Below are positions 10,827 to 50,881 of a stretch of DNA of 64,000 nucleotides, piece after piece. The notes under the pieces are model-generated. The model was not told the origin of the DNA. It did not search any database and was given only the letters and a program-made list of their open reading frames with translations. The translations under genes were made by a program, and so were the position numbers. Each line of letters starts with the position of its first letter. Positions within the stretch are counted from its first letter, which is position 1. Source of the DNA: Vitrella brassicaformis CCMP3155 (taxonomy: Eukaryota; Protista; Chromerida); assembly GCA_001179505.1 (NCBI GenBank), contig CDMY01000385.1, positions 62,001 to 126,000 of the forward strand, written 5' to 3'.

Positions 10827-10960
10827 ATCCCTTTCTGCAGGGAATGCTTACGTGTCTGTGTTCATCGTGGATGCGAGGGTCCACGATGAACACAGACACG
10901 TAAGCATTCCCTGCCCCTCGCAACATGACAGATTACGGCACGCAACATCCCTTTCTGCAG
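10827..10960. repeat. 14-bp direct repeat atccctttctgcag flanking the hairpin (possible target-site duplication)
   Basis: Copies at 10827-10840 and 10947-10960; a partial third copy catccctttc(ag) at 10975-10986. Confidence 0.8.
10837..10914. repeat. Perfect inverted repeat: 35-bp stem with 8-nt loop (78-nt hairpin)
   Basis: 10837-10871 gcagggaatgcttacgtgtctgtgttcatcgtgga is the exact reverse complement of 10880-10914; the loop is tgcgaggg. Confidence 0.95.
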
Positions 10961-23371: not shown

Positions 23372-23788
23372 CAAGGCGTCGCAGCTGAGTCACAGCACCG
23401 CGTTGTCTTTATTATGTGTGCGCTTCGATGGCAATGCGATGGCTCGCTTGCTTCCAACGGCTTTACACAGTGTTCACTTGGCCAGGATGTATGAGTATCA
23501 CTCAGTGTTCATCTGATGTCATTCATTGGCTGAGAAGAGACTGACGCAGGCAATGCCAACATGAAAGCACCCATCATGAGCGCGCGAAAGAACAGACACC
23601 ATCCCCCCTGGAAGTACATACATGCCGCGGACCAAACGCATCAAGACATCAAGAGCTGAGCTCCGTATACACAGATGAGGGAAGTGCTGCCGCAACCAAG
23701 ACAGAACCAGAGACAAACGCACGGAGAAAACAACACCTCTTCCTTTCCCTCTCCCTTCCCTTGCAACCCGAGAAGCCTACACCCGCCA

Positions 23789-25385: not shown

Positions 25386-25460
25386 ACCGTCAGTTGCCTG
25401 GAATGAGTGGAAAGAAAGCACCTCGTTTCATCCATCCTGCGTCCACATAGTAGGGGTTTC

Positions 25461-25482
25461 ATGCAGGGTTCGAACCCTGCAT
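25461..25482. promoter_or_regulatory. Perfect 22-bp palindrome ATGCAGGGTTCGAACCCTGCAT containing a Pol III B-box consensus match (GGTTCGANNCC)
   Basis: Read directly; lies between the divergent kinase and CWF19L2 starts. Function is not shown. Confidence 0.6.
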
Positions 25483-25601
25483 TCCAAACCCTGCACTTAC
25501 TGGAGGAACCACACATGTTTGCGGGAGTCAAAGTCGTGGTGAGAGTCAGCAGGAGGCAGTGAGAAGTGTCTTGGATCTCTTACCGTCTTCTTGCTTGTGT
25601 T
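25470..25601 (-). repeat. Copy A of a duplicated 5'-end module (inverted relative to copy B at 50732-50881)
   Basis: Reverse complement of 25601-25508 matches 50732-50825 at 90/94 nt (first 57 nt identical). Reverse complement of 25504-25470 matches 50847-50881 at 32/35 nt. There is a net 18-nt indel between the two blocks. Confidence 0.97.
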
Positions 25602-28600
25602 GTCAGAGCCAAGATGGCGACGGGCGGCGGAAGAAGTCCAAGAAGGACAAGAAGTCCAAGAAGAGCCGCAGACGGGATGACGATGCGTCAGACTCATCAG
25701 GAGATGACGCTGCTCTCGCTGCAGCTCCCGATGTAGACGCCAAGGTACGAAGCACTCGATGAGTGAGGAATGATCAACCCAGTGAGTGGCTTCTGGTGCG
25801 GGTGCTGCTGTGCTTCATGCAGGATGGCGATTCGCGAGGCGCACGGGACGACTGGATGCTCTCGAACAAGGAGGTGAGGGAGCCAGATGACGGCACTCGA
25901 CCATCGATTGGTTGCTGATACATACATGGCTCGGTGTGCTGGCTATCAGGATGGCGATGCGTGGCTTGATTCGTTGGGCAGTGAGGTCAAGAAACCAGAC
26001 ATACTCGAGGAGAAGAGGAAACAGCAGGAAGCGGTAGGGACGATAGATAAACACACACACACACACACAGTCCCACACAGTCACACCAGTCTGGCTGGTG
26101 GTGGATGGACTTGTGCTTATCTGCAGGCTGAGAAGGCCATCCATCCCCTGGAGCTCAACCCGTACCTTCGCAAGCCACCAGAAGGTGACCGACCACACGC
26201 GGCCGTCTCTCTGACCACACCGAAGAGTTCGAAACTCTCTGCCATTTGACGTGTCATCAGGTGGCGAGAGGCCAGGCGAGACTCCCGAATCAGACGGCCC
26301 CTCGTCTGGCGCCGGCAACGTCCCCGCACACCTGTGTGTGGGCGACGGCGGACGCAGGTGGCGAAACAGAGCCATCAGGCGCGCTAAGGAACAGGTATGT
26401 TGCCGGCCGACTACACGTGCCTGTTGAAGGGCTTCCTGTCAGTCTTTCCTGTCGTTTCTCATGCGTCAGGCTGAGGCCACTGGTGCCTCTGTGGATGAGG
26501 TCGTGGGCGAGCATTTCGGGGAGGGCTTCCGCGAGCGTGACAGGCGTGACGACAGGGGCGGGGACGACAGGGGCAGGGACCACAGGGGGAGGGGTGACAG
26601 GGGGTGGGAGAGGAGGAGGGATCGCAACAGGGACTGGGAGGACCGCAGAGATCGCAGAGACGACGATCGCGACTGGAGAGAACGGAGGAGAGACCAGGGT
26701 GGGCTGACACGCGCTGGGAGAGTGCACCCATCATAGACACACATGCACACCTGTATGGCCTGTTTATTGTCCGTGCAGATTCGTCTGATCGGAGGGAGCG
26801 TCGCGGGCAGGGCTGGCGGAGGTCGCAGGACGACAGGCGGGAGACCGACGGCCCCAGCAGCGACAGACCCCCGCCCCCCTCCAACGGCCAGCCAGCCCCC
26901 ATGGATGTCGACGAGTCCCCGATGGACCATTTCACCGCCCTTAAGGCGAGATACACGCCTGCCGCGCAAGAAGCGCAGCCGTCACAAGACGACCAGCAGC
27001 CAGAGACCTCTGAGAAGCCCAGAGGCGAGGAGGAGGGGGGCGCGGCGGACTACTCGAGCATGAATGCAAACGAGCTGTCTTCGCTAGCGATGAAGGCCAT
27101 GTTGGCGGGCAACATGGACGAGTACCACCGGCTGAACGCGGCGCTCAAGCTGAAACAGACCAGCGACCACCTCAAGCCGAAGGCCCCCACCCCTGAGCAG
27201 CCGTCCGGTGCACGTGCCGGCGCCAGTGCTGGCGGTGCTGGTCAGCGCGTCGAGGTCATCGAGGAAGTGGACAGTGCCGGTGAGAGAGGACGTGCACAGC
27301 ACAGACGGTGTGCGACGAGCGGTCCCTATGTATGTTTGTGTCGTGGTGTCAGGTCGCATGCGGACAATGGTGTCATCCGTGGCTCAGTCTTCCGCCCTGG
27401 CCAAGGGCAAGAAACGCCTCACACACGAAGAGGGAAAGAGGTAAGCGCCCCACCGACACACCACGCAGTACCAAACGCGCCTATCGCTGCACCATCGTCA
27501 ATTGTGTCTGTGTGTTTCCGTTCCAGCTACTATGCGGATGATGCGGTGTCGCTGGAGCAGCTGCTGCGCCGCGAGAAGGTGGAGGGCGTGCAGGACTATG
27601 ACGCCAACTACGCGGGATACATTGTCAGAAAGTAAGACAGCCCGGTCACAATCAACGCAGGAGGGGGGCCCGCCATTGATCCGCGTCTGTGGGTGTTGCC
27701 TGTCTGTCGTAGGGGCAAGCGCTTCAAGGAGCTCCATGAGGATGAGGACGAGAGCTATGCTTTGGGGCGATATGAGTCGCGGGAAAAGGTGGCCGACCCG
27801 CGCAAGAAGGCACACAAGGAGCGGCAGAGGCTCGTACGAGACAAACAACGGCTGCAAAAGAAGAGGTTAGCCGACCTTCTCGCACACGTGCACCCATCGT
27901 GTGCACTGCATGGTTTGTCTGTTGTGCGTGTGGTGATGCAGTGCGGATTGCTCGTTCTGCATGGAAAGCGACAAGTTCGCTGGGCGTCTCGACTGCCTCA
28001 TATCGCAGTCGTTCAAGGTGTATCTGTGCTTCCAGTCCTTCAGCCAGGCCTCCTTCGACCCCCACCTCTTCATCGCACCCATCCCCCACGTCGGCAGCGT
28101 CACCAACCTGGACGAGGACGTCTACGACGAGCTGCGCAACTACCAGAAGTGCCTGGTGCGCTACTTCGACGCCCGCAACCAGGCGCCCATCTTCATCGAG
28201 ACGGTGCGGTTCTTCGTCTCGCCCGAGAAGGCCATGATGGGCGGCGGGCCGCACACCATTGTGGAGGTGGTTGCCGTGCCGGCCGACAGGCTGCAGGAGG
28301 CCAAGACCTACTTCAGCAAGGCCTTCGGCGAGAGCGGGTCCGAGTGGTCGCAGAACAAGAAGATCGTGCCGACGAGCGGCAAGACCGGAGTGAGGGGTCG
28401 CATACCGAAGAACTTCCCCTACGTCCACGTCGACTTCTCGCTGAGTGAGGAGGACTGAGACCTACTAGTGTGCTGGGAGGTGAATGAAATCGGTGTCTGT
28501 GTATGTGTCAGCTGAGGGCCTGGGCCACGTCATTGAGGATACCGAGGAGTTCCCCAGGTATGTGAGTCGGAAGCCACCCGGCATACGAGCGGATGGCACA

Positions 28601-28847
28601 TGGCTGCGCGTATGGGTGTGTCAGGAACTTTGCTCGTGACGTGCTGCTGGGCATGTTGGAGATGACCTCGATGGACAAACCGTTCGTCGACAAAAAGTAA
28701 GTGCTGGAGAGCAGGTCTACGATGCTCAGGCAATCGCTGTGCATGGGCACCTCCCTGTATGTGTGTGTGTGCAGGTCGTTCTACGCGGCTGTCAAGGCGT
28801 TCAAGGAGGGCTTCCAGCCATTCGACTGGACGGCCGCCCTCAAGTAG
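25515..28847 (+). CDS. CWF19L2: CWF19-like protein 2 (CwfJ C-terminal domains; spliceosome-associated); multi-exon
   Basis: Exon 1 MFAGVKVV (25515-25538) splices through intron 25539-25606 in phase 0 to SQDGDGRRKKSKK. Later motifs: HPLELNPY, VGDGGRRW, ELSSLAMKAMLAGNMDEY, DCSFCMES, HLFIAPIPH, DEDVYDELRNYQKCL, HTIVEVVAVP, EWSQNKK, PKNFPYVHVDF, GHVIED, FQPFDWT. TAG at 28845-28847. Confidence 0.9.
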
Positions 28848-29152
28848 ACCATATGACAGGGCAAACATCGGCAGGCAGCCAGTGGATGCCCCAGTAAGTG
28901 GATGAGTGGTCGTGCTGGGGTACATAAGTGTGTGTGCATTTTTCTCGTCGATGCGTTGACGACAGACCGTTTCGATTGATCCTGTGCGAGAGACAATGCC
29001 ATGCATACACTCCCTCGTGTAAAGGGATGTGTTTGTCGAAGATGTGATGAAGCCATTGCCCCATCCCCCTGGTCACCCTGCCATTCATGATCCACCAACC
29101 CAATAGTGCCCACCCACCAGCCACCAGCTGCCTGCCTGCCTGGCTGCCTCAT

Positions 29153-30250
29153 TTACGCTTCCTGTTCCTCGCCCTCCCCTTCCTCCGAGTCATCCTCGTC
29201 CAGTTCCTCTTCAGGCAGCGCTCCCTTCGCCCAGTCATACAGCCGCCTCACCTCTTCCTGCAACGCTCTGTACTCGGTGGCGTGCTGCAGCTCCGCATAG
29301 GTGGGCCGCTTGGCCACGTCAGGCCTCTCAGCTGCAGAGACACCAGTCAGCACATGTGGTCTGTCGGTTCCTTTCGTCTTTCGTTTGTCACCTTTGAAGG
29401 CCTTCCACTTTGTCGTCAAGGCAGAGATGTTCCTCGGGTGGTCGCCGTGAACAAAGGTGGACCCCGGCACCAAGCCGGGCTCCTTGTAGTAGCCCGGCTG
29501 GTAGGCCACGGCTCTGTAGGGCTTGTCACCGCTCGATTGGACGGTCACACCCGCTCTCTTCTCGCCAAATCTGTCCTTAAACTCACGCCGTTTTCTCGTC
29601 ATTTCTGCCACGAATGGCCGCTCTTGCCCCCTCCTGCGTGGAAAAATGATTGATTCCATTCGAATGAGACATGCTCTGTTGGAATACCTGTCCGCGGCCC
29701 GCGTAGTGTCATCAATCATGACGGTCTGGAGGCCTTGCGCCAAATCATCCATGCAGACGCCGGCAAAGGGATTGTTTGGCGTGATGTGTCTCCTCTCGGC
29801 TCTCTTCTTGGTGGCTGGGACGTAAGGCAACTTGCTTATCTTGGTCACCGGCTCATCCCATTTGTTCCTGGGTGGGGTGCTCTGATGCGGAGGGACCACA
29901 ATCCTGCCCACACGCAACAGACAGCCACAATCGACGCTCGTCGACTCTTCCCCCATCGATATCCAGGTCGTGCTGCCTGACCTACCTGCGCGATGGCCTG
30001 AAGAGGACCGCTGCCTCCGTTCCCCCATACACCTCTGATTGGACGAATCATGCCAAGTGACAGTGAATACTATTCATGTGGATCTCAGCCCAGCCCTAGC
30101 TACCTGCGTCCACGACGCGCTTCCTCCCCCCCATGTGCTGGTGCACAAGCCCCGACGGGTCTCGGAAGAAGCCGTCAAAGCCCACCCTCGTCAGGGTGCT
30201 GTGCTTTGCAGGCTGATCCACCATCCCCTTGCTGCCCGGAACCATCCATT
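29153..30250 (-). CDS. Uncharacterised multi-exon protein with acidic C-terminal tail; 5' end unresolved
   Basis: Long open frame with coding-like content (NKWDEPVTKISKLPYVP, RAVAYQPGYYKEPGLVPGSTF, YAELQHATEYRALQEEVRRLYDW, EEELDEDDSEEGEGEE) and embedded GT-AG introns. I could not join the upstream exons unambiguously. Confidence 0.55.
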
Positions 30251-30699
30251 TGCACGGGCGGGTGATGGGGTCTGACCGCATTCTCACCCCATCTGCGACA
30301 GAAAGAGGGGGAGGGGCCTCTGCTTCTCGTCTCTCGCAGGGAGAACTCGTGGAGGCAGGCAGGGCATCGCAGATGGGTGGTGGCAGCGCCTCTTGGCTCC
30401 CCTCCATCAGTGTCCGTGCGTTTGCTCTTTTCGGGCGCGAGCTCAATCTCACTGCTGATCGATCTGGGAGCTTTCGAATTGAAAGCTCAGATGGTGCACG
30501 ACGTCGAGCGCCCCGCCACCATGAGCAGGTGCGGTGGTGGCGGATTCGCTGCCTTGGGAGCTCCGAAGTGAATGGACGGTGCGGTTACTCTTTCTGCTTT
30601 GGCCAAGATGCCATGACCTAGCAGTGGTCGCATGTATCGCCATTGATTGGATGTCTATCCTCTTGTCTGTTTCTTCTTCTATGTGGCACATCACCTCCC

Positions 30700-32076
30700 C
30701 CTTGCAGCTACCGTGTGTGACGCTCTAGGCCATATCGACAGATGGGCTTCCGCCCGTAAGAGGAGCACACATGACGATATGGCCCACACCATCCCACACG
30801 TAAGCGCGGCAGCTCACCATCACTCACAGCATCTTTTTCCCTCCCTCGCCGCCCTCCTGCCCCACCCATCCATTTGCCTGCCTGCCTGCCTGCATTCCTG
30901 CCATGCCCTTCGATGTATCTCGCAGCGAGAAAAAACACAGCGACGATCGATCGTCAGTCAGCACATGCATGCACGGATGCAACGCACGACCTCGCTACTT
31001 CACTCCAGGCTATCAATCAATCAAGGCAGCGCATGTATAGTGAAGGAAGGGACACAGCTCGCTCATTCAATGTACGGGGCAGCAGTACAAGGCAGGCTAC
31101 ACATACGCGTGTCACCGATCCGTTGTCCGTCTGTCGGTCTGTCTGTCTGTGTCGCTCCTCTCCCCTGCTCTCCCCTGCCCTCATCCCCTGGCCAGTCATG
31201 CAGCCGGTACATAGTACACAGAAAACACCACTACCATTCCTCTCGCGTCGTTCCTGTCCTCGGCTTCCTCTTCCTGATCGATCGACGCATCCCATCTGAT
31301 GTCGGTCTGTGTCTCTGTCCCCCGTTCTGCATGGACCCTAGGAAAGCCAGTACTGCCCGTGTTTAGGCGTACCGGTCAACCGCAGGAGGTCCAAGCAGAC
31401 ACCGGGCGACTCACACGACCCCATCCATTCATCACCAGTGCGCTCTCTCAGCATACGTACATACGCAAACACAAAACACCACCCTCACAGACGCAGACAA
31501 GTCGTGCTCTTCCGTCATCGTGTGTCCCATCATCGAGATAGCTCCCGTTTGCCTCTGTCTGCCTGGCTCGTCGACGACTGCATGAGGAAACGCAAAAACT
31601 CGACGTCAGTCCGTCGGTATGCATCTCAGCAGCTTGGTAGGTAGCTTGGTATGGGTTGGCTTACACCATTCTCTCTCCACACACGTGCACTCTCTGTCAG
31701 GCCACTCGGGAAGAGGTCAGACGGTCAGTCAGTCGGTCAGTCAGTACACAGGGATGTACAGCAAAAAGTTGCCACGGTAGGAGGGACGGATCGAAGCAGT
31801 CGATTGACACCCTCCTGATATTGGCTGATTGGCCTCAGCCACATCGCATCAGCCAGCATGGAGCACGGACAACATGCATGCACAGGCAAGCATGGATGCA
31901 TTCATGGGATGGAAGCAGAAATCAGCCAGCCGGCCAGCTAGCCGGCAGCGCCAGTCGATCGATCGATCGGTCGATAGCATATCAAGTGTAGCCTTATCCA
32001 CCCACCTGCCGGCAGGGGCGGTGTGGCACCCTGCTGTCAGACATGACGTGCACGAGACATGACGACACGACCTCAA

Positions 32077-32109
<33 letters not shown>

Positions 32110-35100
32110 TACACATACACTTACGTACAGGTAAACACGCACACACATGTACACAGGTAAGTAGGTCATATGTGAGTGGGTAGCTAGGTAGGTAGGTAGA
32201 TAGTACGCGTGTCACGTACTCATGCGGTAGACAATATACGTACACATAAAACACACACACACACACACACGCAAAGCCAAATTAGGACGCCCTCCTCCCT
32301 TTCCCCCCAAAATGCACGCACGACACAGACACAGACACAGACAGCACCATACCACATCATTCATACACAAAAGGTAGAACACAAAGCCGGCAAACAGCGC
32401 CGCCCGCCCGCCCGCCCGCTATCCAATCATCTGTCTCTTCTGCATCATCAACCTCGTCACGCAGCAAAAAGCATAGCGTATATCTCTCTCCCTGTCCTGT
32501 CTTGCTCGGTTCTCTTGTACATGCATGCTTACCAAATTCAGTGTCGTTGCGCCGCACCAGCTATGTTTGCTGGCTTGGGCAAGCATATCAACAGGCATGC
32601 GTCCATCATCCATCGATCGGTGCGTCACACATTCCAACCTTCTTCCCTTTTGCTTGTCTCTATCTCGCTCGATCATGGCAAGTGAGTAAGTAACAAATCG
32701 TCGGCAGCAAAACCATCCATTCCATGCAAGCAAAGGCACTCACACCAAAGCACACATGTATGACCTGGCTACGGAGACCGTTCACATCACATCACAACAC
32801 AGCACGTAACGCAATGCACGCAATGCAAAACAGCCATCCAGGATTGACAAGATTGACATCGGCCCGTTCGCCAGCACCCTGCCGCATTCGTCCATTTGCC
32901 CATCCGTCCTGAAGCAGGCAGCAAAACCCCCCGACACACCATCCGATCCGACAACACACACACACGGACACACACACACACACACACAGAGCTTCCGAAT
33001 TTCCTTCTAGGACAGACAGGCGGACACGCAGAGAGCATGCAGAGAATGAGATGTAATGCCGTGGGTGGCAGGTGACAGTTCTGTACTTACACGACCGAGG
33101 TCCCTGAGAAGCAAAACGGGCAGACACGCAGCGAGTCAGGCAAGAGAGAGCCTGAAATCGACGAGTAGAAAGTAACACGACAGCGAGTGACTGAGAGGCG
33201 AGAAAAAGAGTGTGTGCGTGTGTGCGTAAGGGGCGAGTTGAGACGAGAGACACAGGCGAGCGAGCGAGTGAGCAACAGGATGAGCCAGGCAGCACAAATG
33301 ACTGTCCTGAGACGGTAGTGAACTTCACGGTAAGCAGTGGAATGACACAGAAAAGGCTGACTTCCGGCCGACTCACTCACCTTGCCTCGACTAACTAGCT
33401 GATTAAACTCTGGGTGGGTGAGAGAGGTGAGCTGAGCGGGTGGCGGGGTGGCATGGAGTGGAATGGAGCAAGGGAAGGAGTCATCACAAATATGCCAGAC
33501 AGTGAGGAGCACGTCACGCGAGAGAGAGAGATGGAAACAGACGAACAGACAGCAGTTGGACTGAGAGCGAGCGATTGATCGGTGGATGGAGGCACAGCGG
33601 CTCGTGTATCTCAGCAAGATATGCAAGATGGATGAACTAGCCAGCCAGCCAGCTATAGACTATAAAATGTGATCGATGCATGTGTACGTAGTATACGTAA
33701 TACGTAGGCGGATATGTATACATACGTACGCAGGCCGATATGTATGCGTATGTATGTATATGTATGTGTATGTGGATGTGTGTGTAGAGACAGACGTGTA
33801 CATATATGCATATGTATGTATGTAACGAGACATTACGTACGCGTGTGTGGTGGTTAATTGCTGCCTCTGTCCGTCGGGGTCGGTGTCGGCAGAGACGGCA
33901 TACACGGCAGGCAGGCACACCGAAAAGCAACCAAAGAAAGACCGAAACAGCAAGAAACATGGGCGGCGCGTATACGTGCATAAATACGTAACATACGTAT
34001 GGAGGGATGTGTATGCGTGTGTCAGTGGATGGCGAAAAAAACCTCCTCTGCCCGTCCCACCCTGGTCTCCCCTCCCCCCCTCGGTCACATCACCGCACTA
34101 AAGGCATCGCACGCCACGCACTCCGCCCGCCCATCCATCGATCGATCAGGTCAAGCAAAGGATTGATTGAGAGAGCAATGACACGTTGCCGGTGGTTCTA
34201 CGAACACAACACCTGTAGAAACCTGTCAAAGCCCTCTCTACACACCACACCACACCCACGCACGCACGCACGCACGCACGCACACATGTAAGCAAGCAAG
34301 AGTGTCCTACAGACCGGCCCTACAGGTGTCAAAAAAACTAGGTGAACTAGGTAGGCAGGTATGGCAGGCAGATTATCGAGGGAAGAGCTGTGCTCTGGAA
34401 GGCACACTGACGTGGTGGACGGGCAAAGCAGAGATCTGAGAGCATACCTTGCTAGCACACCACCCACGCACACGGAGAAGCCATCGCAGTCCCACATACA
34501 CACACGCTGAGGCACAGACCAGACATGAAGAACCACCTGGCTCGCCATACACACACAGGGGAGTGAAACCTGGTGCAGACAGGCAGGCAGTGAGGCAGTC
34601 GGTATGAATGAATCGAGCAAGCGATTGGTTGGTCGGGAGTCGGCTGCTCCCGACCGGTAGACACAGGCAGACAGACGAGCGAGACACTACACGCCCCTCT
34701 AGCTAGCCGTGGGGCGTCCATACATCCGTCCATCGTATACACGCATTGGTACTCATCGGCACAAGACACCAAGGGAAGGGCAGACAGGCAGGACAGACAG
34801 GTAGACGGGCAAACATCGCCCGAGAGATGATAGAGCCTCGCTGTCAGCGTGCGTGCGTGCGTCAGTGCGTGCTGCGTCCACCACGGTCACATGCATGGAC
34901 GCACAGAACCACTAAATTCAGAAAAAGGCTGACTCAACCAGTTCGTGTGGTGGGCGTGGGTGGGTGGTGGGTGGGCGTGGGTGGGTGGGTGGGTGGTGTG
35001 TGTGGTGGATAAGCAAATCGTGGGGTGAGTATCTGTGTCTGTGTGTGGGCGGGTGGGTGGGTGCGTATAAACAATGGCGGGGTGCGGTGCGTCGCGTGTG

Positions 35101-38100
35101 TGGGATGAAATGTACTCGACAGACAGACAGACAGACACACACACATCGATCGATCGACATGACATGACACGACACGAGTTGTGAGAGAAGAGACACAAGG
35201 GGTCGGCCTGCGCTTTCGTATGAAACAAACTGGCAGTCAGTTAGTCAGTCAGATGATTAAGTAATGGACTCTGGACAACACACGGACGCACGCCCTCACG
35301 CAGCCAGGAGCAACAGATAGCCAGGAGGAGATTGATACGAGTGAATGAATGAATGGATGAGTGAATGGACGATGAGAAGGAAACAAATACGCTCAATAAA
35401 GTTCCTTCCTGTGCGCCTCCCTCCCTTCCTAGCTGTGCCAGCCAGTCCTTTGTCTTGTCACCCCACACGCATCTCACTGATCGACCTCCATCCCACGTAC
35501 GTGCAGCCTATCTGCCTGTCTGTCTGTCTGGTTTGGTACGTCAATTCCACGGTTAATTGTGTGGTACACCGCAAAACCACACACTCACACACATCCGTCC
35601 GTCCATCATCCATCCATCGCTCGCACCTCGACCGCACCTTTGCATACATCCACCCACCCACCCAGTCGCCCTCTCCCCCTCCCCCTCCATCCGGCAGCCA
35701 AGGAACACTCCCTCCCCGCAGGTTTGTCCCCCCTCCCCTGTTCTGGCGATTTATACGTCGTCATTGCTTTGGCAGCGATTAAAGGCAGTAGGCAGGCAGT
35801 GCGCACACACACACATGTACAGGCAGGCAGGCAGGCAGGCACGTAGGCAGGCAGCAGCGAAGCAGTGCAGCAGCAACAGCAGCAGCAAGATGTAGGCACG
35901 TCACATCACATCACCTCACGTAGCAGGTCAGCCATGTTTCCAACACACGTGCGGCAGTCGGTCGATCTCTCGTCTTTGGGAGGAAGGGTAGCTGGGTACG
36001 GTACGAAGGGGGCATAGGTGAACGACGGAAGTCACGATAAGACAATTAACTCGCAGGGACGCACCAGCCAGCCAGCCATCAATAAATCAAGTCATGTTTA
36101 TGGTGAGAGGGACCTCCAAACGAACGATCGACCTGAGCCTCACTCTCCCTCCCGTTGTCTTTCTCTCTCCATCATGTTAGCGCGTGTGTCAGTCAGTGTG
36201 ACGGCAAGTAAGCCAGCCAGCCAGCCAACACATAGATACAATACAGTCGACCTGTGTGCGTGAGCGTCATCTTCCCTCGTCAGAGTGAGTCGACGCGTCC
36301 AAAAGCATATATGGCACACGGGAAGTCTAGCCTGGCCCTGGCGTGGCCTGCCTGCCATTGATCAACTCATCCGTCAGCCAACACGCACAAGAAAGCCTCT
36401 CTCGTGTGCGTCGGACCTCCCTGTCGTGTGGGGTGTTCGTTTCCTCTTTCCGCCCTCTCTGTCGGCCTGTCTCTCTGACCGGTGACACATCAACATTTCC
36501 CTGGTGAAGTTAAAGCACAACACATTCGCCCTCATCAGAGGAATGAACAACAGCCTCTCCTCGCTCTCATTCTCGCCCCGTGAATGCACTCATCCATCCA
36601 TCCCTCCCTCCCATGACGGTCACCTTAAACGATGAACCGCCAGGCCACCCCGCCCCGCCCACCGAGAGTGAAAGTGTCAGCGATCAGTGAGTGTCAGCCA
36701 TCCGGCTAGAAAGAAAAGTGCAGTGAGTACATGGCCAAGTGGCCAGGAAGAGAGCCAGCAACCTCCAGCAGCAGAGGGGTCATGCACACACACGCGCACA
36801 CACACACATCAGAACACGCAAAAGACAGAACCCGCATCCACGTCAGCCAGCCAGAGGGCGAAAACGTATCCATACACCCACACGTGGATCGATCGACCTT
36901 GAAAGTGAATGTGACGGATGAATGAGTGAATCAATGAATGAATGGTGGCGCGAAAGACACTCACACGATTGAAAACGATCGGCCCTCTCTGTTTTACATT
37001 TCTGCTTCCTGGTCGGCCTGTGCGCTCACTCTCTGTCCTCGTGTCGTGTCGCGTCGGTCGTGTGCAAATAACATACATCATACAACCGGTAATAGCCTCG
37101 CTCGTGGTCATGCGTGATAGAAACCCGTGACATACACGATGCCATATACGTCTTTGTTGACCGACGCCGTGCTCTCTGCATCCCACCAGGCAGTGTGCGT
37201 GCCCATCAGTAGAGCCGTGTAGCTCATGCGTCCGTCCGGACATCGATCGACATACATCCGCCAACAGACAAACGGTGAGTGAGTGAGTGAGTGAGTCAGT
37301 GTGTGGACAGGTGAACCCCCCAGGCCATCTCGCATCCCAGTTGGGAGTGACGCGATGGCCAAGACGCAGACAGACGGACAGACAGGAAAAGCAGACAACC
37401 TGATTAATAGACAGCCATGCCATGCCAGCCAGCCAGGGTGTGTGTGGTGTGTATGTGTGTGCATGCGTGTGTGCGCGCGCGAGAGTGCGTGCGTCGGCAG
37501 CAAAGCGACAAATACAGGCAGACGACAGCTAGCTGGTTGAGCAGGCAAGAGAGAACATGCACACACCGGCCGACCGACCGACCAGTACATGCACGCAGCC
37601 ACCACCGAAGCAACAAACACAGCCGGCCACACCAATCACGCAGGCCAACCGTGTGTGTGTGTGTGTGTGTATGTATATATGCGCCAGCCAGCATCCGGCC
37701 AGTCAGCGTGGCTTGCCGATCGGACGCTGGCTGGCACTGCACGCCACAGCAAGGCACGGCGCTCACCAAACGACACACGAGAGGGAGGGAGGGAGTGGGC
37801 GGGCTGACTGGGTAGGTGAGTCGCTGCTCGTGCTCTCCGCACGTTGTGTGGTGGTCCAAAAACAGCAGAGCTGTGCCAATCACTCACTCACCGCCCTCCC
37901 CCTCTGTGACCGACCGGCTCTCAGAAACTTTCATCATGTGGGTAGGTAAAGCCATCCGTCTACACCTGCGTGTACACGCACGTGTAGCGTGCCCGTACAT
38001 GCCTGACTGACTGACGTGTATACGATACGCGTACATACTGACTCAAGTATGTATGTAAACAACAAATCGCCAGCCAGCAAATCAGTCGCGCCCTAGAAAG

Positions 38101-40300: not shown

Positions 40301-40418
40301 CGCCAGCCAGAACAGAGGAGTCATAGACAAAACCGCGGAGTCAGTCACGTTCCCTTGCTGCCGTCACTCGAGGGCCGCCCTCCCCTCCCTCCCTCCCTCC
40401 CCCCGAGTAGCGGTGTCC

Positions 40419-41376
40419 TCATTGTGTGATGGATCGGCGGAGCAGTCGCTGCTCCTTCCGCCGCTGCCACAGCGGACTCTCCTCCACACTGCCCAAACGA
40501 AACTCCCTGACACACAGGCAACACACAACAGCACACCACCGTCATATCGCATCGCGTAGGTCCCTCCTCCCTCCCTCGCTCTGTGTCTCTACGTGCGTAC
40601 CTGATGCCGTCAGCCCCGTCGGATGCGACGAGTCGGGGTAGGAATGCGGGTGTGTCGTCGTCGGACGGCGTGGGGTCCCATCCGCGGCTCCAGAAGGGCG
40701 GGCGGCTGCTGTGTGAGGTCGGGGGAGACGGAGTGCGGCTGCCGCTGCTGTCGGCGGAGTGTGTGTGGGAGGGCACGATGGCCTCGAGGTCGGTGGAGTG
40801 GAGACGGAAGAGGGTGGGGTTGAGGGAACTGTACCCAGCCATGTGGGGAGTCGATGGCTCTGACAAACAAAATGACACGCACCCTGCCTGGTGTCTACTG
40901 TCTCGCGTGTTGGTGTGTGCGTGTCCGTGGTGTGCTTGTGTACCATCGAAGGCTGGGCTGTCGATGTCAGCACAGTAGTCGGTCGTGGCACAGTCAGAGA
41001 AGACGCCAGCATCTGAATCAACTGACAGACAGGCGGAGAGACAGACAGACAACCACACAAGACAGTCAATCGACAAGCACGTGCCACATGCGTCTCGCGA
41101 GGCTAGGCGTCTCTTTCCTGCCGTCTCCCCTCGTGTGTCGCCTGTGCTTGCCGCACCTGATATCTTGAGGTCGGCCCGGGGCATCTTAGTATTGGTGTGA
41201 GGCACGTCACTCACAAACTTGACTGAAGAGCGAGGACAGTGAGACGGCACTGTCTGGACGGCCGGGACGCCATGGCAGCTCTGCACGCACGCCGCTGTGT
41301 GCTCTCCGTCGGCCGTCTCAGGCTGAGCTGCACACGAGTCGTGATGGCGGTCACCGCAGGAAACCTCCAGGGCCAT
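40419..41376 (-). CDS. Orphan disordered S/P/D-rich protein, 4 exons (about 240 aa)
   Basis: ATG at 41376 (MALEVSCGD). Three GT-AG introns (phases 1, 1, 2) join open frames and end EFRLGSVEESPLWQRRKEQRLLRRSITQ-stop at 40419. No known domain recognised. Confidence 0.6.
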
Positions 41377-41611
41377 CGCTGTCAGCTGCTCACAAGCGCG
41401 GTGGTAGGCGACAAGGGTGCGCAAGGGACAGTGTGACAGACAGCAGCGAGATCTGGGGGGTGCGAGCTCGACAAACGTGGTTGGCTGGGTTTGAGTGTGA
41501 GGACTTGATGTGGACACTGTGACAAGATCTGGGCGCCGTTACCCTTCTTGTGTCCCTGCGACCGCTTCCTTCATACCGCCGTCTCGCGCGGCCTGCGAGA
41601 CACCACTGGCG
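41377..41611. promoter_or_regulatory. Putative bidirectional promoter (235 nt between divergent ATGs)
   Basis: ATG at 41376 (-) and ATG at 41612 (+). Confidence 0.5.
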
Positions 41612-44573
<2,962 letters not shown>

Positions 44574-44599
44574 GGGGCGGGGCGGAGTGCGGGGGGCGG

Positions 44600-47500
44600 C
44601 GCTGCGTTGTTTGGTTGTGTTCGTGTTGTGGTGGTGTGTGTGCTTGAGAGGGGTGGGTGACACAGGGGGCCATGCATGGGGTTCGTGAGTGAGGGAGGGA
44701 GGGAGGGAGGGCTGGCTGTCTTGGTTTCTTTTCTCTTCCTGCCTCCTCTATGCCTTCCTGCCTGCCTGCGTGCGTCAACTCTTACACACATTTGCGTACC
44801 TGCGTGCCTGCGTGAGGCTGGTGGGTGGGGCATACATTGTCTGTCTGTCTGTCTGTCTTTCCTCCCTCCCCCTAAGCTAAGACCCTTTCAGTGCACTCGC
44901 AGGTACACACATGCCTACGTTCACACTCACCACGGCAATCAATCAAGGGGTTGGGCTTTCTGCCACGTGGCAAGGTTATCAGGTATCTATCTATCGTGTC
45001 TATACCACAACACAACATAACCTAACCTGGCGCAGCACCGCAGCTTTCAAGGTCAGAGCAGGGCGGGCAGGCAGGTCGGTCATTTTTGTAAGTGGCTGTC
45101 CGTGTCGACTGCGTGTCCGTCCGTCCGTGCCCGTGCCTGATTGACGGAGGTAGATGCTCGCTAGCTGCTGTGGTATGATGCTCACTAGCCGCTGACTCCC
45201 CCAATGTTGCTCGCTATCTGAAAGAGAGAGAGCAGCCGAGGGGGCAATGCATGAGACAGAGAGACAGACAGACAGGCAGGAAGGCAGGTAGACAGGAGTG
45301 CACATCTGCCTGAGTTCGCCTATGGCGCCATTGGGGAGGGCTGAAGGGCGGGAAGGGGAGGGGAGGACGGCCGTACTGGGCTCTTCTCATGCGTCCGTCC
45401 ATCACTTGACACATCACACCACATCAATCGCATCGGGTTTTCATGCGGTTGTGCTAATCGCATTCATTCCACTCACAGGTCCATTATGATCAATCATCTT
45501 ATATATCTTGTGAATGGATGCAGTGCACGTGTGTACGGTATGTAATGTGTAACAGCAGGTGGTTGCTCACTTCGAGCCGAGTGAGGTTTTGCATTCCATT
45601 CATGCAGGTGATATGCATCCGTCGCGTTTCGTTTCGTTTCGTTTGGTTCCTTCCGTTGCGTTCGTTTGTGCGTGCGTTTTCTTTTCTTGTCTTTTCGTTT
45701 CACGCTGGCTGGCTGACTGCTCGACTGGCTGACTGGCCTGTTTCTCGGTTGATTGCTCTGTGGCCGATGAGTACATGCGGGTGTGCCGAGCCTGATTGTG
45801 GCTGATAGGTAGGTTATCGCATGCAGCAGGCTGGCTGGCGAGAAGATGCGGTGCTTGTTGTTGTATCGAGCATCAATCCATCCGCCAGATAGATAAAGGA
45901 CGATCGATGCAACTGACGGGCGGCGATGGGCGATCTTTTTGGTCGGTATGATATGCAGCGGGCTTGCTCATGTATGTGCGGATCGATCGACCAGTCAGCG
46001 TGGTCGGCTCTTTTTTCCTTCCTTGCTTACTTTGCATGCATGCATGGATGCATCTATCCTATCAATGGTTTCTTTGAGTGCATGGTGTGAGCATCGAGCA
46101 CCCACCCATCCATCCCTCCATCCCCTTGTTTTGCCGCATGTATCGCAACTCATCCACGGATACACATACTCACACGCACGGAAAGCGACACACGAATAAA
46201 CGGGGTTGTGGGCGAGTGGGTGGGTGGGTAGGCCGATCAGATAAACGGACCGACTGTGAGGTGGAAGGCAGGGCAGAGAGACAGAGGGAGGGAGGGAGGG
46301 AGGGAGGGACAGATGAGGGGAGGAACAGCAGTGTTATCTGCTGAGTACGACGCAATTCATAGAGAGAGAGAGAGAGGGCGGGCTGGCTGGCTGGCTGGCT
46401 GGCTGCGATGAGTGAGGGAGGGTGCATGGCATGTTTCTCTGCTAATGGTGTGCACGTGTATGTGTGGCCTGTCCGTGTGCGCTGGGCTGGGGTGGTCTGC
46501 TGAGTGCGTGGCGTGAATGACTGGCTTCCTGGCTTGCTGTGGTAGCCTTGTTACACACATCGATGTATGTATGACACGTGTGTATTTCTATGTCTGTCTG
46601 TCAATGCTGGCTGGCTGGCTGGTTTTATTCACTCACTCACTCCCCGCTCATTCAGTGCACCCATTGTCCGTCCGTATGCGTGGTGACTCGTTCGGTCCGC
46701 TCCCTCGGTCTCTGTTCGTTCGTTCGGTCGTTGGCTGCTCTGTCCTACCGGCCGGTAGCGCAGAGGCCTTTCTTCATACACACACACAAGGAAGGAGATA
46801 TACAAACACGGCGGCCAGGGAGGCCACCACGCTCACCTCATTGTCTCTTTCTCACCTCATTGTCACTCGTCATTGATCCGCTCATCCATTGCATCCATTG
46901 CCTCCATCCATCCACCCATCAGTGCATTGGTCGATTGGTCGTCGTGTGCCCTACGTATGCTATGTATCTAAACATGTACGCACCTATGAATGTATGTACG
47001 TATGTATGTGTATGTGTGTGTACTGACTTACTTCCTCTGTGGAGAATGTGTATGTGAATGTGTGTATGTGTATGCACACCCATGGCCTGCAATGCACTCA
47101 CTGCAGCACATCTTTTCTTCTCGTCTGCTCGCTCGTTGCATTTGTACTCATTCACACATGGGCGCTTCGGCACGGATGGATGGATGCATGGATGGATGGG
47201 TGGACTCTCTCGTTGTATTTTTCGTCGCGGCTTCCCTGCTCGTCTCGTGTGTGCACTCCTCACGTGTCACACATGTATCGAGCGGTGATCCGCGGTCATT
47301 TGATCTCCCTTCTCCGTCCGTCCATCCATTCATCCATCCATCCATCACTCACTCACTCACGACACACACTCTTTGGACATCTCTCAGTCTGTCTGTCTGT
47401 CTGTCTCTGTCTGTCTGTCGCTCTCTGTATGTATAGCCCTTCCTTGCACTCTCGCACTCCTCTCATCTCCTCTGCGGCCTTCTGGCTCGAGGTTATTCGT

Positions 47501-50500
47501 ACGTACGTAAAGCACTCACTCTTACACATAGTCAGACGCCTGGATACCTGCCTCCCCGCCTGCCCGCCCGATCAAACTGTGGTCGTCAGTTTTTCTCTGC
47601 TTTGCAATGCGCTGCCTGGGGTAGCACAACACAGAGAACAGCATGCTCTCAAGCTTCCAGTTGACTCTGTGTGTGTCTGTCTCCTTTCTATGTATGTATT
47701 TTTCGAGGTGGCTGGCGAACTTGGTGGCTGCGTTCATTCGTCTCTTCTCTCCTTCTCTGGCTGGCTGGCTGTCTGGCTGTTCGGGCGCTGCGGGTCTGTG
47801 GGTCACGTCACACACAGGGAGGGGAGGGGAGAGAAGGTCCGGTCCCTTGGTCGATCGGCTGCTTGGCGGGCGGGCGGGCGGGCAGGCAGGTTGTATAGGC
47901 ATTCACACATTCGTATTCGTTATATATTCGTTTGTCCGTTTTCTTTGATTGTTTGTGGGGTCGATCGATCGGTCGATGTGTATGTGTGGATGTATATACA
48001 TGTGTGTGTATCACTCACTCACTCTCTCTCTCTCTGCGGCTGGTCGGTCGGTCGGTCGGTCGGTCGGGCACTCATCCACTTCCTCTCACTTACTTGCCTC
48101 GCTCTCCTCTCTATCCGTCTGTGTGTCGTGTTGTGTTGTGTTGTGTTGTGCTGCACAGTGCTGGGTGACACGGTGTATACTAGGTAGCTCTCTGCCTGTC
48201 CTCTCTCCCTTGGTCCTGCCAAGACGTGCCCTCTCTCACTCGCCGTGCCTCACGATGGATGGATGGATGGATGGAGTTTCATTGTCGATTGGCTGGTTGG
48301 CTGGCTGTTTGCTCTCCTCGTGCTATGTGGGTGTTGGTTCGGTGGGTCAGTCAACAGGTGTGTGTTCGGTTGGTCGGTCGGTCGTACTTTCTTGTGTGTC
48401 TTGTCGATGGATGGATGGATGGATCGGCTGAGTGAGCTGCTTTTAACATTTAAGGCCGGCACGTGTGCAATGGCATGGGTGCTGCAGTGTGTGCTGTGCG
48501 TACCTTGTCTGTGAGCCTGTCTGTCTGTCTGTCTGTCTGCAAAGGGCCTTTTTGAAACCAACACCAGCAAGGAAGTCAAGTCGATCGATCGATCGACAGC
48601 CATCCCCCGCCTCCCACCCACCCCCTCACTCACTAGACCCCCCCGATTCATACATAGCCTGCCTGCTGTGTGTATGTATATATATCCGCCTGCTGTGTGT
48701 GTGCGTCCGAGACGAATGGATGGTATGGATGATCATGGTATGGTATACACGTGTGACAGCCAGCACTGTGTGATGCACCCATCTTTTTGCGTACGTACAC
48801 AGTGGATCGATGCATCGCCTGTGTGTGTGTCTGTGTGTGGTGTTTTTCCCCTGCTCCATCTGAGTCTCTCTCTTTCTTGCCGCCCGCCTACGGCGTGCGT
48901 GGGTGGGTGCGTGCGTCTCACTGCATTGCGGCTCTGGAGAGAGCCTAGGGCATGCTCGTAAGCCGTTATCACGACCGACCGACCGACCGACAGACAGCCA
49001 AGCCGAAGGCCCGACCGACCGCTTTTATTGATGTGCGTACGTCACATGCGTATGGATGTGCTGTGTGTGTGTGTGTTGGTGAGAGAGTGCATGGCGTGAG
49101 GTGAGCAGTCAGTCGTGTATGGGCAGTCAGTCAGTCCGTCCTGCTGTGATGCGATGCGATGTGTGTCCCAGTCAGCGAGTGTGACCTTTTTTGTGTGTAT
49201 GTCCGTCCATCTGTCTGTCTGTCTGTCTACGCGTACCAGCTGAGGCCAACCCATTTATCTACAGCCAGCGACAAACGAGGGAGGGAGGGAGGGAGGGAGT
49301 AAGGGAGTAAGGGTGCGTGTTGTCCACCGGAGGGCATTGCACACACAATGGCAAAGATACAGATTTTGATTATGCATGCGTACCGAGGCGAGGAGAGTGC
49401 AGTGCCCCCCTTTTTTGTTCCATGCTCACCCCACCCACGCAACGCACCGCACCCCCTATACACACCTGCGATGCATTCCTTCATTTCTTCGTTCGTTGTG
49501 CTGGCTGGTGTGTGCATGTACGTATGCATCCATCCATCCATCCACCAACCTCATCCCACCTACCATACGCACCCGCATCTCTCTCTCTGTTGCCTCTCTC
49601 TACCTCCCTCTCTCTAACCTTGATCCCTCCCGGCCAGCTGACGCGCCTGGGTTGGTTTTCCCTCTGCCTTGCCTTGCTTGAGTATTCCATTCATTCCTTA
49701 ATTCGGCCGTCGTTGCGTACTTGTGTCTCGCTCGGCTTCCTCATTCGCGCGCGACGCACAACGTGTCAGCCACGCCCTCGGTCAACCAGTCAGACGGACA
49801 GGCAGACAGCAGGACAGACAGCGACAAGACAGCCAACACATTTAGTAAGAGTGAGCGACTGACCGGAACGAAGGAAGGAGCACATGCACATAAGTACGTG
49901 CACATAGACGAGGCCAGCGCGACGGGACGACGGCCGCACTGCTTACATCCGATACTTACCTGCTGCTTACTTGCTATACTCTCTCGTGGGCGTGGGGTGG
50001 CCGGCGACGGTTTTGCCTGAATCGATCACAGCCAGCCGCATGCACCCATGCTTATCCATGCTTATCGATCCATCGTTCCCGAAGAACATACATGTGTGCG
50101 TGTATACTTGTCCTGTGCGTCGCTCCTTTTATATATGTGGCTCCCTCTATCTGCCGCAGGGTGCTTCGCTTCGGAGACGCGTCGGTCGGTGCAGTGTGTG
50201 CGTGTCGTGTCCATCTGTCTATCTGTCTGCATTAATTGCTGTACGTTACTTACACGTGTGTCGTGTCGTGTCGTGTGGTGTTGTGTTGTGTGAGTACATC
50301 TGTCTGTCTGTGTATGATGTGGGTACTTACTCGCTGACCCGACAGCCGACTTGCACCTTGCTTGCTTGTAATTAACTAGGCACCTTCTTACTTGCCTGTT
50401 GCCATGTCTGCATGTGTGTATGTGTGGCTTGCCTTCCTCCCTATCTCTGTCTGTCTCCGTCTCCTCCCTCCTGCGCGTCAAGATGCGACAACACATGATG

Positions 50501-50700
50501 ATGCACTCATGCGGTGGATGGATATGGCATGGAGAGACATATGATGTCCGGACGCCGGCTGTGCGCGTAACTGCGTCACATCCACCTGTGTACGTGGATG
50601 GGATGATCACTCTGTGAAAGCTATTTATGAGCAGAGGAAAAATTACAAGATGGGGGCCTTAAGAAGGACCATGGATGACCAGATCGTGTGAATATTGACA
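44600..50700. repeat. About 6-kb microsatellite-rich interval ((GT)n, (CTGT)n, (GGAT)n, (GGCT)n, (GGGA)n, (GTCG)n)
   Basis: Read directly; no recognisable coding sequence. Confidence 0.65.
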
Positions 50701-50731
50701 TCAGACAAATACATGCACACTGCAGGGTCCG

Positions 50732-50818
50732 AACACAAGCAAGAAGACGGTAAGAGATCCAAGACACTTCTCACTGCCTCCTGCTGACACTCACCGCGAC
50801 TTTGACTCCCGCAAACAC
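50732..50818 (-). pseudogene. Defunct copy of CWF19L2 exon 1 and most of intron 1
   Basis: Minus strand reads GTG TTT GCG GGA GTC AAA GTC GCG|gtgagt (start ATG changed to GTG; FAGVKVA). It is followed by 63 of the 68 intron-1 nucleotides, truncated 5 nt before the acceptor, with no exon 2 downstream. Confidence 0.85.
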
Positions 50819-50881
50819 GTGCGGTGTCAGATGGGCGAGGAGCTCATCCAGTAAGTGCAGGGTTTCGAGAGCAGGGTTCGA
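50732..50881 (+). repeat. Copy B of the duplicated 5'-end module
   Basis: See copy A: 90/94 and 32/35 identity to the reverse complement of 25601-25470. Confidence 0.97.

What the first reader, a model, noticed from the sequence alone, without database searches (positions are those of the whole stretch)
25602..50731. Candidate recent ~25-kb inversion bounded by an inverted breakpoint duplication
Seen: the two module copies are inverted and bracket a 25.1-kb block holding CWF19L2, two orphans and the MAPK. Flipping this block puts CWF19L2 on the minus strand directly against copy B, rebuilding a head-to-head CWF19L2/DNAH1 pair like the five other pairs in the window. Established: inversions made by staggered breaks leave inverted duplications at both breakpoints, as described for Drosophila inversions. 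Seven substitutions in 129 aligned nt suggest a fairly recent event (inference).
Basis: inference. Interest (0 to 1): 0.8.

Follow-up and report, generated by a model that had tools for sequence, protein, structure and literature searches.

The report
Inverted copy of a gene start
In the alga Vitrella brassicaformis, about 140 bases from the start of the splicing-factor gene CWF19L2 exist a second time, flipped and now dead, 25 kb away in front of a dynein gene; this could be the scar of a 25-kb inversion or a copy-and-paste repair event, and the sequence alone cannot decide.

Summary
A unique segment occurs exactly twice, inverted: 25470-25601 and 50732-50881. There are 8 substitutions in 132 aligned nt plus an 18-nt indel, and the copies bracket a 25,130-nt block.

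The anatomy needed correcting. RNA contigs, the annotated protein and orthologue N-termini show that copy A is the working 5' end of CWF19L2. It holds the leader, the conserved start ATG at 25515 (not 25614, which is out of frame), 8 codons, the splice donor and all but 5 nt of intron 1.

Copy B has GTG in place of that ATG, and nothing coding follows it. It is a dead pseudo-exon 293 nt upstream of the ATG of a DNAH1-type dynein gene.

An RNA contig and unitigs from another run confirm the assembled order. Both inner junctions also occur in a sediment metagenome.

Outgroup tests failed: Chromera's locus was unavailable and apicomplexan loci share no neighbours.

My estimates for the origin are staggered-break inversion about 0.45, templated copy-insert about 0.38, other about 0.17. 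The scan has noted similar duplicated gene starts elsewhere in this genome. This is a known kind of footprint, of modest interest.

The parts
25470..25601 (+). Copy A of the duplicated module. It is functional and continuous with CWF19L2: 5' leader with ACCCTGCA motifs, conserved start ATG at 25515, 8 codons, donor at 25539, and 63 of the 68 nt of intron 1.
   Evidence: Repeat. RNA splice joint 25537/8>25606/7 in X12. P0001 N-terminus equals 25461-25538 spliced to 25607. Orthologues start at the residue aligned to M19.
50732..50881 (-). Copy B, the inverted duplicate and a pseudo-exon. It has GTG (50818-50816) in place of the conserved ATG, an 18-nt insert, a retained GTGAGT donor and 63 nt of intron. 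No coding sequence follows it on the minus strand.
   Evidence: substitution list; translation; no minus-strand ORF with coding-like codon usage in 44.4-50.9 kb; tblastn of P0001 residues 4-25.
25461..25538 (+). Annotated first coding exon of CWF19L2 (26 codons from the ATG at 25461). The conserved start is more likely the in-frame ATG at 25515.
25539..25606 (+). CWF19L2 intron 1 (68 nt, GT..AG). The repeat ends 5 nt before its 3' end. The last 57 nt of the repeat (25545-25601) are identical in both copies.
   Evidence: RNA joint; alignment; run-length test P=0.08.
25461..28847 (+). CWF19L2 gene (770 aa, CwfJ_C_1 and CwfJ_C_2 domains).
   Evidence: eight RNA-confirmed introns.
23789..25385 (-). 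Gene A: lineage-specific 482-aa protein P0154, head-to-head with CWF19L2. Its ATG at 25385 lies 84 nt from the left repeat edge.
   Evidence: RNA contigs over 23524-25315.
25461..25482 (.). Perfect 22-nt palindrome (TGCAGGGT / ACCCTGCA arms), the longest in the window. Its centre lies 2 nt from the left repeat edge, and it is degraded in copy B.
   Evidence: shuffles give 0.03 palindromes with arms of 11 or more; motif has 9 hits against 3.8 expected, 7 of them at the two loci.
25602..50731 (.). The 25,130-nt block between the copies, which is the candidate inverted segment.
29153..30224 (-). Annotated 268-aa gene without a Pfam match.
41630..44477 (+). MAPK-like protein kinase gene with a low-complexity C-terminal extension. 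Exon limits are approximate.
44500..50731 (.). Low-coding, microsatellite-rich stretch abutting copy B. Its T>A skew on the + strand resembles the sense strand of confirmed introns.
50831..50850 (+). ATG plus CCA|GTAAGT donor on the dynein strand inside copy B, the ATG being inside the 18-nt insert. It would be in frame with the dynein ATG at 51175 if spliced to the acceptor at 51173/4. Its use is untested.
   Evidence: Sequence. No transcript-derived fragment was found.
51175..64000 (+). Axonemal inner-arm dynein heavy chain of the DNAH1/DHC2 type. It runs off the window, and its first in-frame ATG is at 51175.

Best explanation
Shown: a single segment of about 132-142 nt from the 5' end of CWF19L2 was duplicated once, in inverted orientation. 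It comprises the leader with a palindromic ACCCTGCA motif cluster, the conserved start codon, 8 codons, the splice donor and intron 1 minus its last 5 nt. Copy A stays in continuity with the rest of CWF19L2 and is the expressed original. Copy B lies 25 kb away and 293 nt upstream of the ATG of a DNAH1-type dynein gene, pointing away from it. It is a decaying relic: its conserved ATG is now GTG, it carries indels, its palindrome is degraded, and nothing coding lies downstream. Inferred origin, my single most likely choice and only narrowly so: CWF19L2 once lay head-to-head with the dynein gene. Staggered breaks on either side of the module, plus a roughly blunt break 84 nt upstream of gene A, were filled in and rejoined with the 25.1-kb segment flipped. 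CWF19L2 left with one copy of its own start region and became the divergent partner of gene A, and the other copy stayed behind at the dynein promoter. Only breakpoints that leave each gene with its core start region would survive selection, which would explain why both breaks lie right at gene starts.
For: The duplication is real, unique and inverted, and unitig depth indicates two copies genome-wide. Copy A is functional: the RNA splice joint lies inside the module, the annotated protein starts there, and orthologues begin at the residue aligned with M19. The junction of copy A with CWF19L2 must be ancestral, because a working intron straddles the repeat edge. Copy B is dead: A25515G removes the conserved start and no coding ORF follows. 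The assembled order has independent support. A spliced RNA contig links the copy-A-specific bases to CWF19L2 exon 2, and an X2 unitig links gene A to copy A. Features that favour inversion: the inverted orientation at both ends of a block of whole genes; copy B positioned and oriented exactly like a divergent gene start, about 356 nt start-to-start from dynein with TGCATGCA motifs between; a size and one-sided duplication that match the Drosophila precedent; no terminal microhomology and no clean target-site duplication at the copy B junctions.
Against: No outgroup or strain with the opposite orientation was found. Chromera's locus was unavailable, Besnoitia and Cardiosporidium share no neighbours, and JGI metagenomes lack the organism. 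Both inner junctions are already present in organism B and in a sediment metagenome. The present arrangement is just as orderly, since gene A and CWF19L2 are head-to-head, so flipping gains nothing. Inversion requires a break only 84 nt from gene A's ATG at the edge of a 6-kb non-coding stretch. The left repeat edge lies 2 nt from the centre of the longest perfect palindrome in the window, which is awkward if that junction was made by end-joining, unless the homology really starts at 25460. The flanks of copy B share a 10/11 direct match (102/5000 random sites). Earlier scan notes (unverified by me) report short flipped copies of gene-start pieces 1-2 kb from their source in this genome, which inversion cannot explain.
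Confidence: 0.45

Rival explanations
1. Templated copy-and-insert without inversion. Gene A and CWF19L2 have always been neighbours. During repair of a break in the dynein upstream region, about 140 nt were copied from the CWF19L2 start and inserted in flipped orientation. The template was either DNA, perhaps initiated at the palindrome, or the 5' end of the unspliced pre-mRNA. Copy B has been decaying since.
For: Copy A is fully native in function and nothing requires its left junction to be new. The repeat edge lies 2 nt from the centre of a perfect 22-nt palindrome, a classic site for hairpin breakage or template switching. The module starts about where the CWF19L2 leader should start and ends inside intron 1, like the 5' end of a nascent transcript. 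The copy B flanks show a weak direct repeat (10/11, P about 0.02). The event would be near-neutral for all four genes. Earlier scan notes describe several short flipped copies of gene starts or introns close to their source in this genome (leads, not verified here).
Against: The source is 25 kb away, further than in the noted local cases. Neither junction has terminal microhomology, and the flanking repeat is offset by 5 nt, so it is not a clean target-site duplication. It leaves as coincidence that the copy landed in divergent orientation at a typical head-to-head distance from a gene start. The inverted orientation is only a 1-in-2 outcome.
Confidence: 0.38
2. Duplication first, by any route, followed by one or more flips of the block through homologous recombination or gene conversion between the two inverted copies. 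The present orientation would then say nothing about the ancestral one.
For: The last 57 nt of the module are identical, while the first 75 nt carry all 8 substitutions and the indels. This is compatible with a recent conversion tract. Inverted repeats are substrates for such flips.
Against: A difference-free run of that length is not significant (P=0.08). 57 nt is short for efficient recombination. No alternative junction was seen in any run laid, although unitigs cannot phase across the 57-mer.
Confidence: 0.08
3. Remnant of a larger inverted segmental duplication of CWF19L2 next to dynein, the rest of which was deleted.
For: Larger inverted duplicated cassettes are noted elsewhere in this genome (unverified).
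Against: The inner edge of copy B is sharp, with no residual similarity beyond 50731, and nothing resembling CWF19L2 occurs elsewhere in the window.
Confidence: 0.05
4. The module is a mobile element, a small RNA gene, or an assembly artefact.
For: None beyond its being repeated.
Against: Only two copies exist, and there are no terminal inverted repeats or clean target-site duplication. Rfam has no match, and folding z-scores lie between -1.2 and +1.4 on both strands. Both copies and their junctions are present in independent runs, and a spliced RNA contig bridges copy A.
Confidence: 0.02

Closest known systems
Inversions with inverted breakpoint duplications from staggered breaks (Ranz et al. 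2007, PLoS Biol 5:e152, PMC1885836)
   Same: Ancestrally unique, non-repetitive sequence is present as two inverted copies at the two ends of a segment. One copy is functional and the other is degenerating by substitutions and small indels. The 132-150 nt size lies inside the reported 46 bp-1.9 kb range. Only one of the two breakpoints is duplicated, as in 12 of 18 Drosophila cases.
   Different: The Drosophila cases were established by comparison with outgroup gene order, and no outgroup order is available here. The organism is a chromerid alga, and the segment is far smaller (25 kb) than the cytological inversions studied there.
Templated insertions / filler DNA at repaired double-strand breaks (own knowledge, not looked up in a paper here)
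   Same: A short stretch of unique sequence is copied from elsewhere on the same chromosome into an intergenic site in either orientation, with the donor left intact.
   Different: Such insertions usually show junctional microhomology and often come from very near the break. Here there is no terminal microhomology and the donor is 25 kb away.
Other duplicated gene-start modules noted by this scan in the same genome (s1-197160, s1-080137, s1-201647)
   Same: These are short (85-330 nt) inverted copies of a gene's promoter, first exon or intron placed beside another gene. In s1-197160 the copies also flank a gene block and the origin was left unresolved.
   Different: In those cases the copy is reported as reused by the recipient gene (new first exon, leader or intron). 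Here no reuse of copy B could be shown. I did not verify those notes.

Membership tests
Staggered-break inversion with inverted breakpoint duplication | Two inverted copies of otherwise unique sequence at the two ends of the segment | tested here: met
   Two copies only, by unitig depth (24.3x against about 12x).
Staggered-break inversion with inverted breakpoint duplication | One copy remains continuous with its parental gene, and the other is orphaned at the far breakpoint and degenerates | tested here: met
   Copy A is spliced into CWF19L2 mRNA. Copy B has lost the conserved ATG and has no downstream coding sequence.
Staggered-break inversion with inverted breakpoint duplication | An outgroup or ancestral arrangement shows the segment in the opposite orientation with a single copy | tested here: inconclusive
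   Genomic context of Chromera Cvel_5095 is not on record. Besnoitia and Cardiosporidium share no neighbours with Vitrella. Gene A is an orphan. Metagenome scans were empty.
Staggered-break inversion with inverted breakpoint duplication | Duplication size in the documented range | tested here: met
   132-150 nt against 46 bp-1.9 kb.
Templated insertion (break-repair copy) | Donor locus intact and native on both sides | tested here: inconclusive
   The right side is native, because an intron straddles the edge. The left side cannot be judged without an outgroup. The palindrome spanning the edge suggests it is native.
Templated insertion (break-repair copy) | Junctional microhomology or a target-site duplication at the recipient site | tested here: inconclusive
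   There is no terminal microhomology. A 10/11 direct match occurs between the flanks, offset by 5 nt (102/5000 random sites).
Templated insertion (break-repair copy) | Recipient flanks contiguous in relatives that lack the insert | not testable with these tools
   No relative or strain without copy B could be accessed.
Shared bidirectional gene-start module (CWF19L2 and dynein both starting inside it) | Dynein mRNA begins in the module and uses the ATG at 50831 and the donor at 50850/1 | not testable with these tools
   Only sequence logic is available: the ATG is in frame with the ATG at 51175 through the acceptor at 51173/4. No transcript-derived N-terminal fragment was found. The ATG lies in an 18-nt insert that copy A lacks.
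Mobile element (MITE / Pack-MULE-like) | Multiple copies, terminal inverted repeats, clean target-site duplication | tested here: not met
Structured non-coding RNA gene | Match to a known family, or folding better than shuffled sequence | tested here: not met
   Rfam has no hit in either copy. Folding z-scores lie between -1.2 and +1.4.

The most novel reading that the evidence does not exclude
The palindromic TGCAGGGT/ACCCTGCA element at this gene start could be a recurrent fragile or recognition site. It would seed short, flipped copy-and-paste events or small inversions of gene starts throughout the Vitrella genome. This case would then be one visible product of a genome-wide process that shuffles promoters and first exons between unrelated genes.
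Probability: 0.1. Interest if true: 0.65.

Novelty: new member of a known kind. Interest (0 to 1): 0.3.

Why it matters
On its own this is an ordinary footprint of structural change: one duplicated, decaying gene start. It is useful in three ways. First, it corrects the CWF19L2 gene start. Second, it gives a dated marker of about 6% divergence, with two explicit, PCR-testable ancestral junctions that would separate inversion from templated insertion. Third, together with the similar cases this scan has noted in the same genome, it points to a possibly frequent process that moves promoters and first exons between genes in a compact chromerid genome. That process deserves a genome-wide census more than any single locus does.

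Tried and rejected
- Module as an RNA gene: no Rfam hit and no unusual folding.
- Module as a mobile element: only two copies and no clean target-site duplication.
- Assembly artefact: rejected by the spliced RNA contig and by independent unitigs.
- Copy B as first exon of a minus-strand gene. I considered this because an ATG-initiated frame and two in-frame indels survive. I rejected it as unsupported because no downstream ORF has coding-like codon usage, and because the conserved start is M19, which copy B has lost.
- Homology extending into the flanks: not above shuffles. A possible 9-nt extension (shared CATGCA with a 3-nt offset; chance about 1% from the motif density) stays ambiguous.
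- A second-breakpoint inverted duplication: none.
- Outgroup synteny. Metagenome scan with a dynein exon: no relatives. Metagenome scan with the module core: no match. Chromera orthologue: not on record for context. Besnoitia and Cardiosporidium: no shared neighbours. Gene A: no homologues.
- Dynein 5' end from transcript-derived proteins: nothing found.
I searched exon by exon by reference and used the annotated proteins that the tools returned.
Full report
**Observation**

The window holds one inverted pair of a sequence that is otherwise unique: 25470-25601 on the + strand and 50732-50881 as its reverse complement. The pair has three parts:
- a 94-nt core at 96% identity;
- an 18-nt indel present only in copy B;
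- a 38-nt outer part at 89% identity.

That gives 8 substitutions in 132 aligned nt. The edges are sharp. Neither the outer nor the inner flanks align better than shuffled sequence, and no third copy exists in the window.

**Organism and genes**

The CwfJ exon retrieved the organism's own annotated CWF19L2 protein (P0001, 770 aa). Its locus is Vitrella brassicaformis GCA_001179505.1, contig CDMY01000385.1, identical to the window with an offset of 15460. In window coordinates the annotated genes are:
- a GH26-like gene (-), 21441-23290;
- an orphan 482-aa gene (-), 23789-25385, called gene A here (P0154; its only hit is itself);
- CWF19L2 (+), 25461-28847;
- a 268-aa gene (-), 29153-30224.

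No gene is called from 30225 to at least 38847. A MAPK-like kinase (+) lies at about 41.6-44.5 kb. A dynein heavy chain closest to DHC2/DNAH1 (+) starts at 51175. The stretches 30.2-41.5 kb and 44.5-50.7 kb have almost no coding signal on either strand.

**What the module is**

The single read-laying run showed spliced, RNA-derived contigs. One joins 25537/8 to 25606/7 (GT..AG), so an intron of 68 nt (25539-25606) lies almost wholly inside copy A. The annotated protein begins MQGSNPAFQTLHLLEEPHMFAGVKVV|SQDGDG, which is exactly 25461-25538 spliced to 25607.

Orthologues from coccidia, Cardiosporidium and MMETSP transcripts begin MLAGLRF or MLSGLRF, aligned with Vitrella M19 (MFAGVKVV). The conserved start is therefore the ATG at 25515. 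Copy A thus holds:
- CWF19L2's leader, carrying a cluster of ACCCTGCA motifs;
- the conserved start codon and 8 codons;
- the splice donor;
- intron 1, except its last 5 nt.

Because a working intron straddles the right edge of the repeat, the junction between copy A and CWF19L2 must be ancestral. This excludes the variant in which the module originally belonged elsewhere and was fused onto CWF19L2.

**Copy B**

Read on the minus strand, copy B has GTG where the conserved ATG should be (A25515G in the alignment). It also carries an extra 18 nt, and its version of the palindrome is degraded. It keeps a GTGAGT donor and 63 nt of intron.

Downstream of it on the minus strand, no open frame between 50.9 and 44.4 kb has coding-like codon usage. 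Per-codon scores there run from -0.31 to +0.03, against +0.11 to +0.35 for real exons. Copy B is therefore best read as a dead pseudo-exon.

Copy B sits 293 nt upstream of the dynein ATG and points away from it. On the dynein strand it contains an ATG, inside the 18-nt insert, followed by CCA|GTAAGT. If spliced to the acceptor just before 51175, this would be in frame. Whether dynein uses it could not be tested; a search for transcript-derived N-terminal fragments found nothing.

**Is the assembled order right?**

The 57 nt identical in both copies (25545-25601) form a unitig at twice the flanking depth in run X2. Short-read graphs therefore cannot phase across it. Splicing, however, removes that stretch. 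The RNA contig carries the copy-A-specific bases of 25502-25538 joined to CWF19L2 exon 2, and an X2 unitig runs uninterrupted from gene A to 25574. Together these give the order gene A, copy A, CWF19L2 independently of the reference assembly.

The inner junction of copy B (module followed by CGGACCCTGCAG...) appears as a loose end in X2 and in a marine sediment metagenome (X11). The duplication is therefore present outside the reference culture. No alternative junction was seen.

**Inversion or insertion?**

Un-flipping 25602-50731 would put CWF19L2 divergent from dynein, about 356 nt start to start, with TGCATGCA motifs in between. The size and the one-sidedness of the duplication match the Drosophila precedent: 46 bp-1.9 kb, with 12 of 18 cases duplicating one breakpoint only (PMC1885836).

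The argument offered for it is not discriminating, though. In the present order CWF19L2 is already head-to-head with gene A, with start codons 129 nt apart. Both orders therefore contain one divergent pair and one gene facing a 6-kb non-coding stretch.

Points that lean towards inversion:
- the inverted orientation;
- the gene-start-like placement of copy B;
- the absence of junctional microhomology or a clean target-site duplication.

Points that lean towards a templated copy-insert:
- Inversion needs a break only 84 nt from gene A's ATG.
- The left repeat edge lies 2 nt from the centre of the longest perfect palindrome in the window (22 nt; shuffles give 0.03 palindromes with arms of 11 nt or more). 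That is easy to explain if the palindrome is native and provoked breakage or template switching. It is hard to explain if the junction was made by end-joining, unless homology really starts at 25460, as a shared CATGCA with a 3-nt offset hints.
- The flanks of copy B share a weak direct repeat (10/11; 102 of 5000 random sites).
- The module spans roughly the leader to intron 1, like the 5' end of a nascent transcript.
- Earlier notes of this scan report short flipped copies of gene starts or introns 1-2 kb from their source in this genome, which inversion cannot explain. I did not verify those notes, and I use them only to set the prior.

**Outgroups**

All accessible tests were uninformative:
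- Chromera's orthologue (Cvel_5095, P0011) has no genomic context on record.
- Besnoitia and Cardiosporidium share nothing with Vitrella around CWF19L2.
- Gene A has no homologues.
- JGI metagenome contigs contain neither relatives of the dynein exon nor the module core.

**Other readings rejected**

An RNA gene, a mobile element and an assembly artefact were all rejected.

All substitutions fall in the first 75 nt of the module. This is suggestive of conversion or constraint in the intron part, but it is not significant (P = 0.08).

**Verdict**

The event is a single inverted duplication of the CWF19L2 start, with a dead copy left at the dynein promoter.

The origin stays open. I put staggered-break inversion at about 0.45, templated copy-insert at about 0.38, and other routes at about 0.17. 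Those other routes are later flips by recombination, a remnant of a larger duplication, and an artefact or mobile element. This is a new member of a known kind of footprint and is of modest interest by itself. The recurrent pattern across this genome is the more interesting lead.

Noticed in passing
window 25461-25517: The annotated CWF19L2 start (ATG at 25461, M1) is probably too far upstream. Orthologues from several alveolates begin at the residue aligned with M19 (ATG at 25515, MFAGVKVV aligned with MLAGLRF). The ATG at 25461 sits inside a CATGCA promoter-type motif.
   Followed up: yes
window 25461-25482; also 50721-50728, 50856-50863, 50887-50894, 50908-50915: The rare 8-mer ACCCTGCA/TGCAGGGT (9 hits in the window against 3.8 expected) is concentrated at the two module loci, with 7 of the 9 hits there. 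Three of those lie just outside the repeat edges at copy B. At copy A it forms the longest perfect palindrome in the window. It may be a promoter element or a fragile site.
   Followed up: partly
window 30200-41500 and 44500-50731: Two long microsatellite-rich stretches with almost no coding signal flank the kinase gene. They have opposite AT skew: A-rich on the + strand to the left and T-rich to the right. By comparison with confirmed introns, this suggests transcription away from the kinase on the left and in its direction on the right. No gene is annotated in 30225-38847. Such long non-coding stretches look unusual next to the closely packed genes elsewhere in this window.
   Followed up: partly
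window 10837-10914: A 78-nt near-perfect palindrome (92% self-complementary) turned up in the self-comparison of the window.
   Followed up: no
window 27632-27712 and 28209-28281 (run X11): The sediment metagenome X11 holds contigs identical to the reference and also contigs with many differences. There are about 8 differences in 60 nt of one CWF19L2 intron and fewer in exons. At least one clearly diverged wild relative or strain therefore exists that could serve as a near outgroup.
   Followed up: no
window 21441-25385: The annotation splits the minus-strand coding run left of the module into an orphan 482-aa gene and a 362-aa GH26-like gene. The exon at 22632-22745 matches Glyco_hydro_26 just below threshold. 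Whether they form one gene was not examined.
   Followed up: no
L003 1-2247 (Besnoitia besnoiti CM008349.1): In Besnoitia a protein kinase gene lies about 8 kb upstream of CWF19L2, and in Vitrella a MAPK-like kinase lies 13 kb downstream of it. No sequence relationship between the two kinases was seen by tblastn, so this is probably chance.
   Followed up: partly
window 33703-33824, 32086-32156, 46962-47030: Sub-threshold Rfam matches to mir-297, mir-466 and similar families fall on TG/TA microsatellites and are almost certainly composition artefacts.
   Followed up: no
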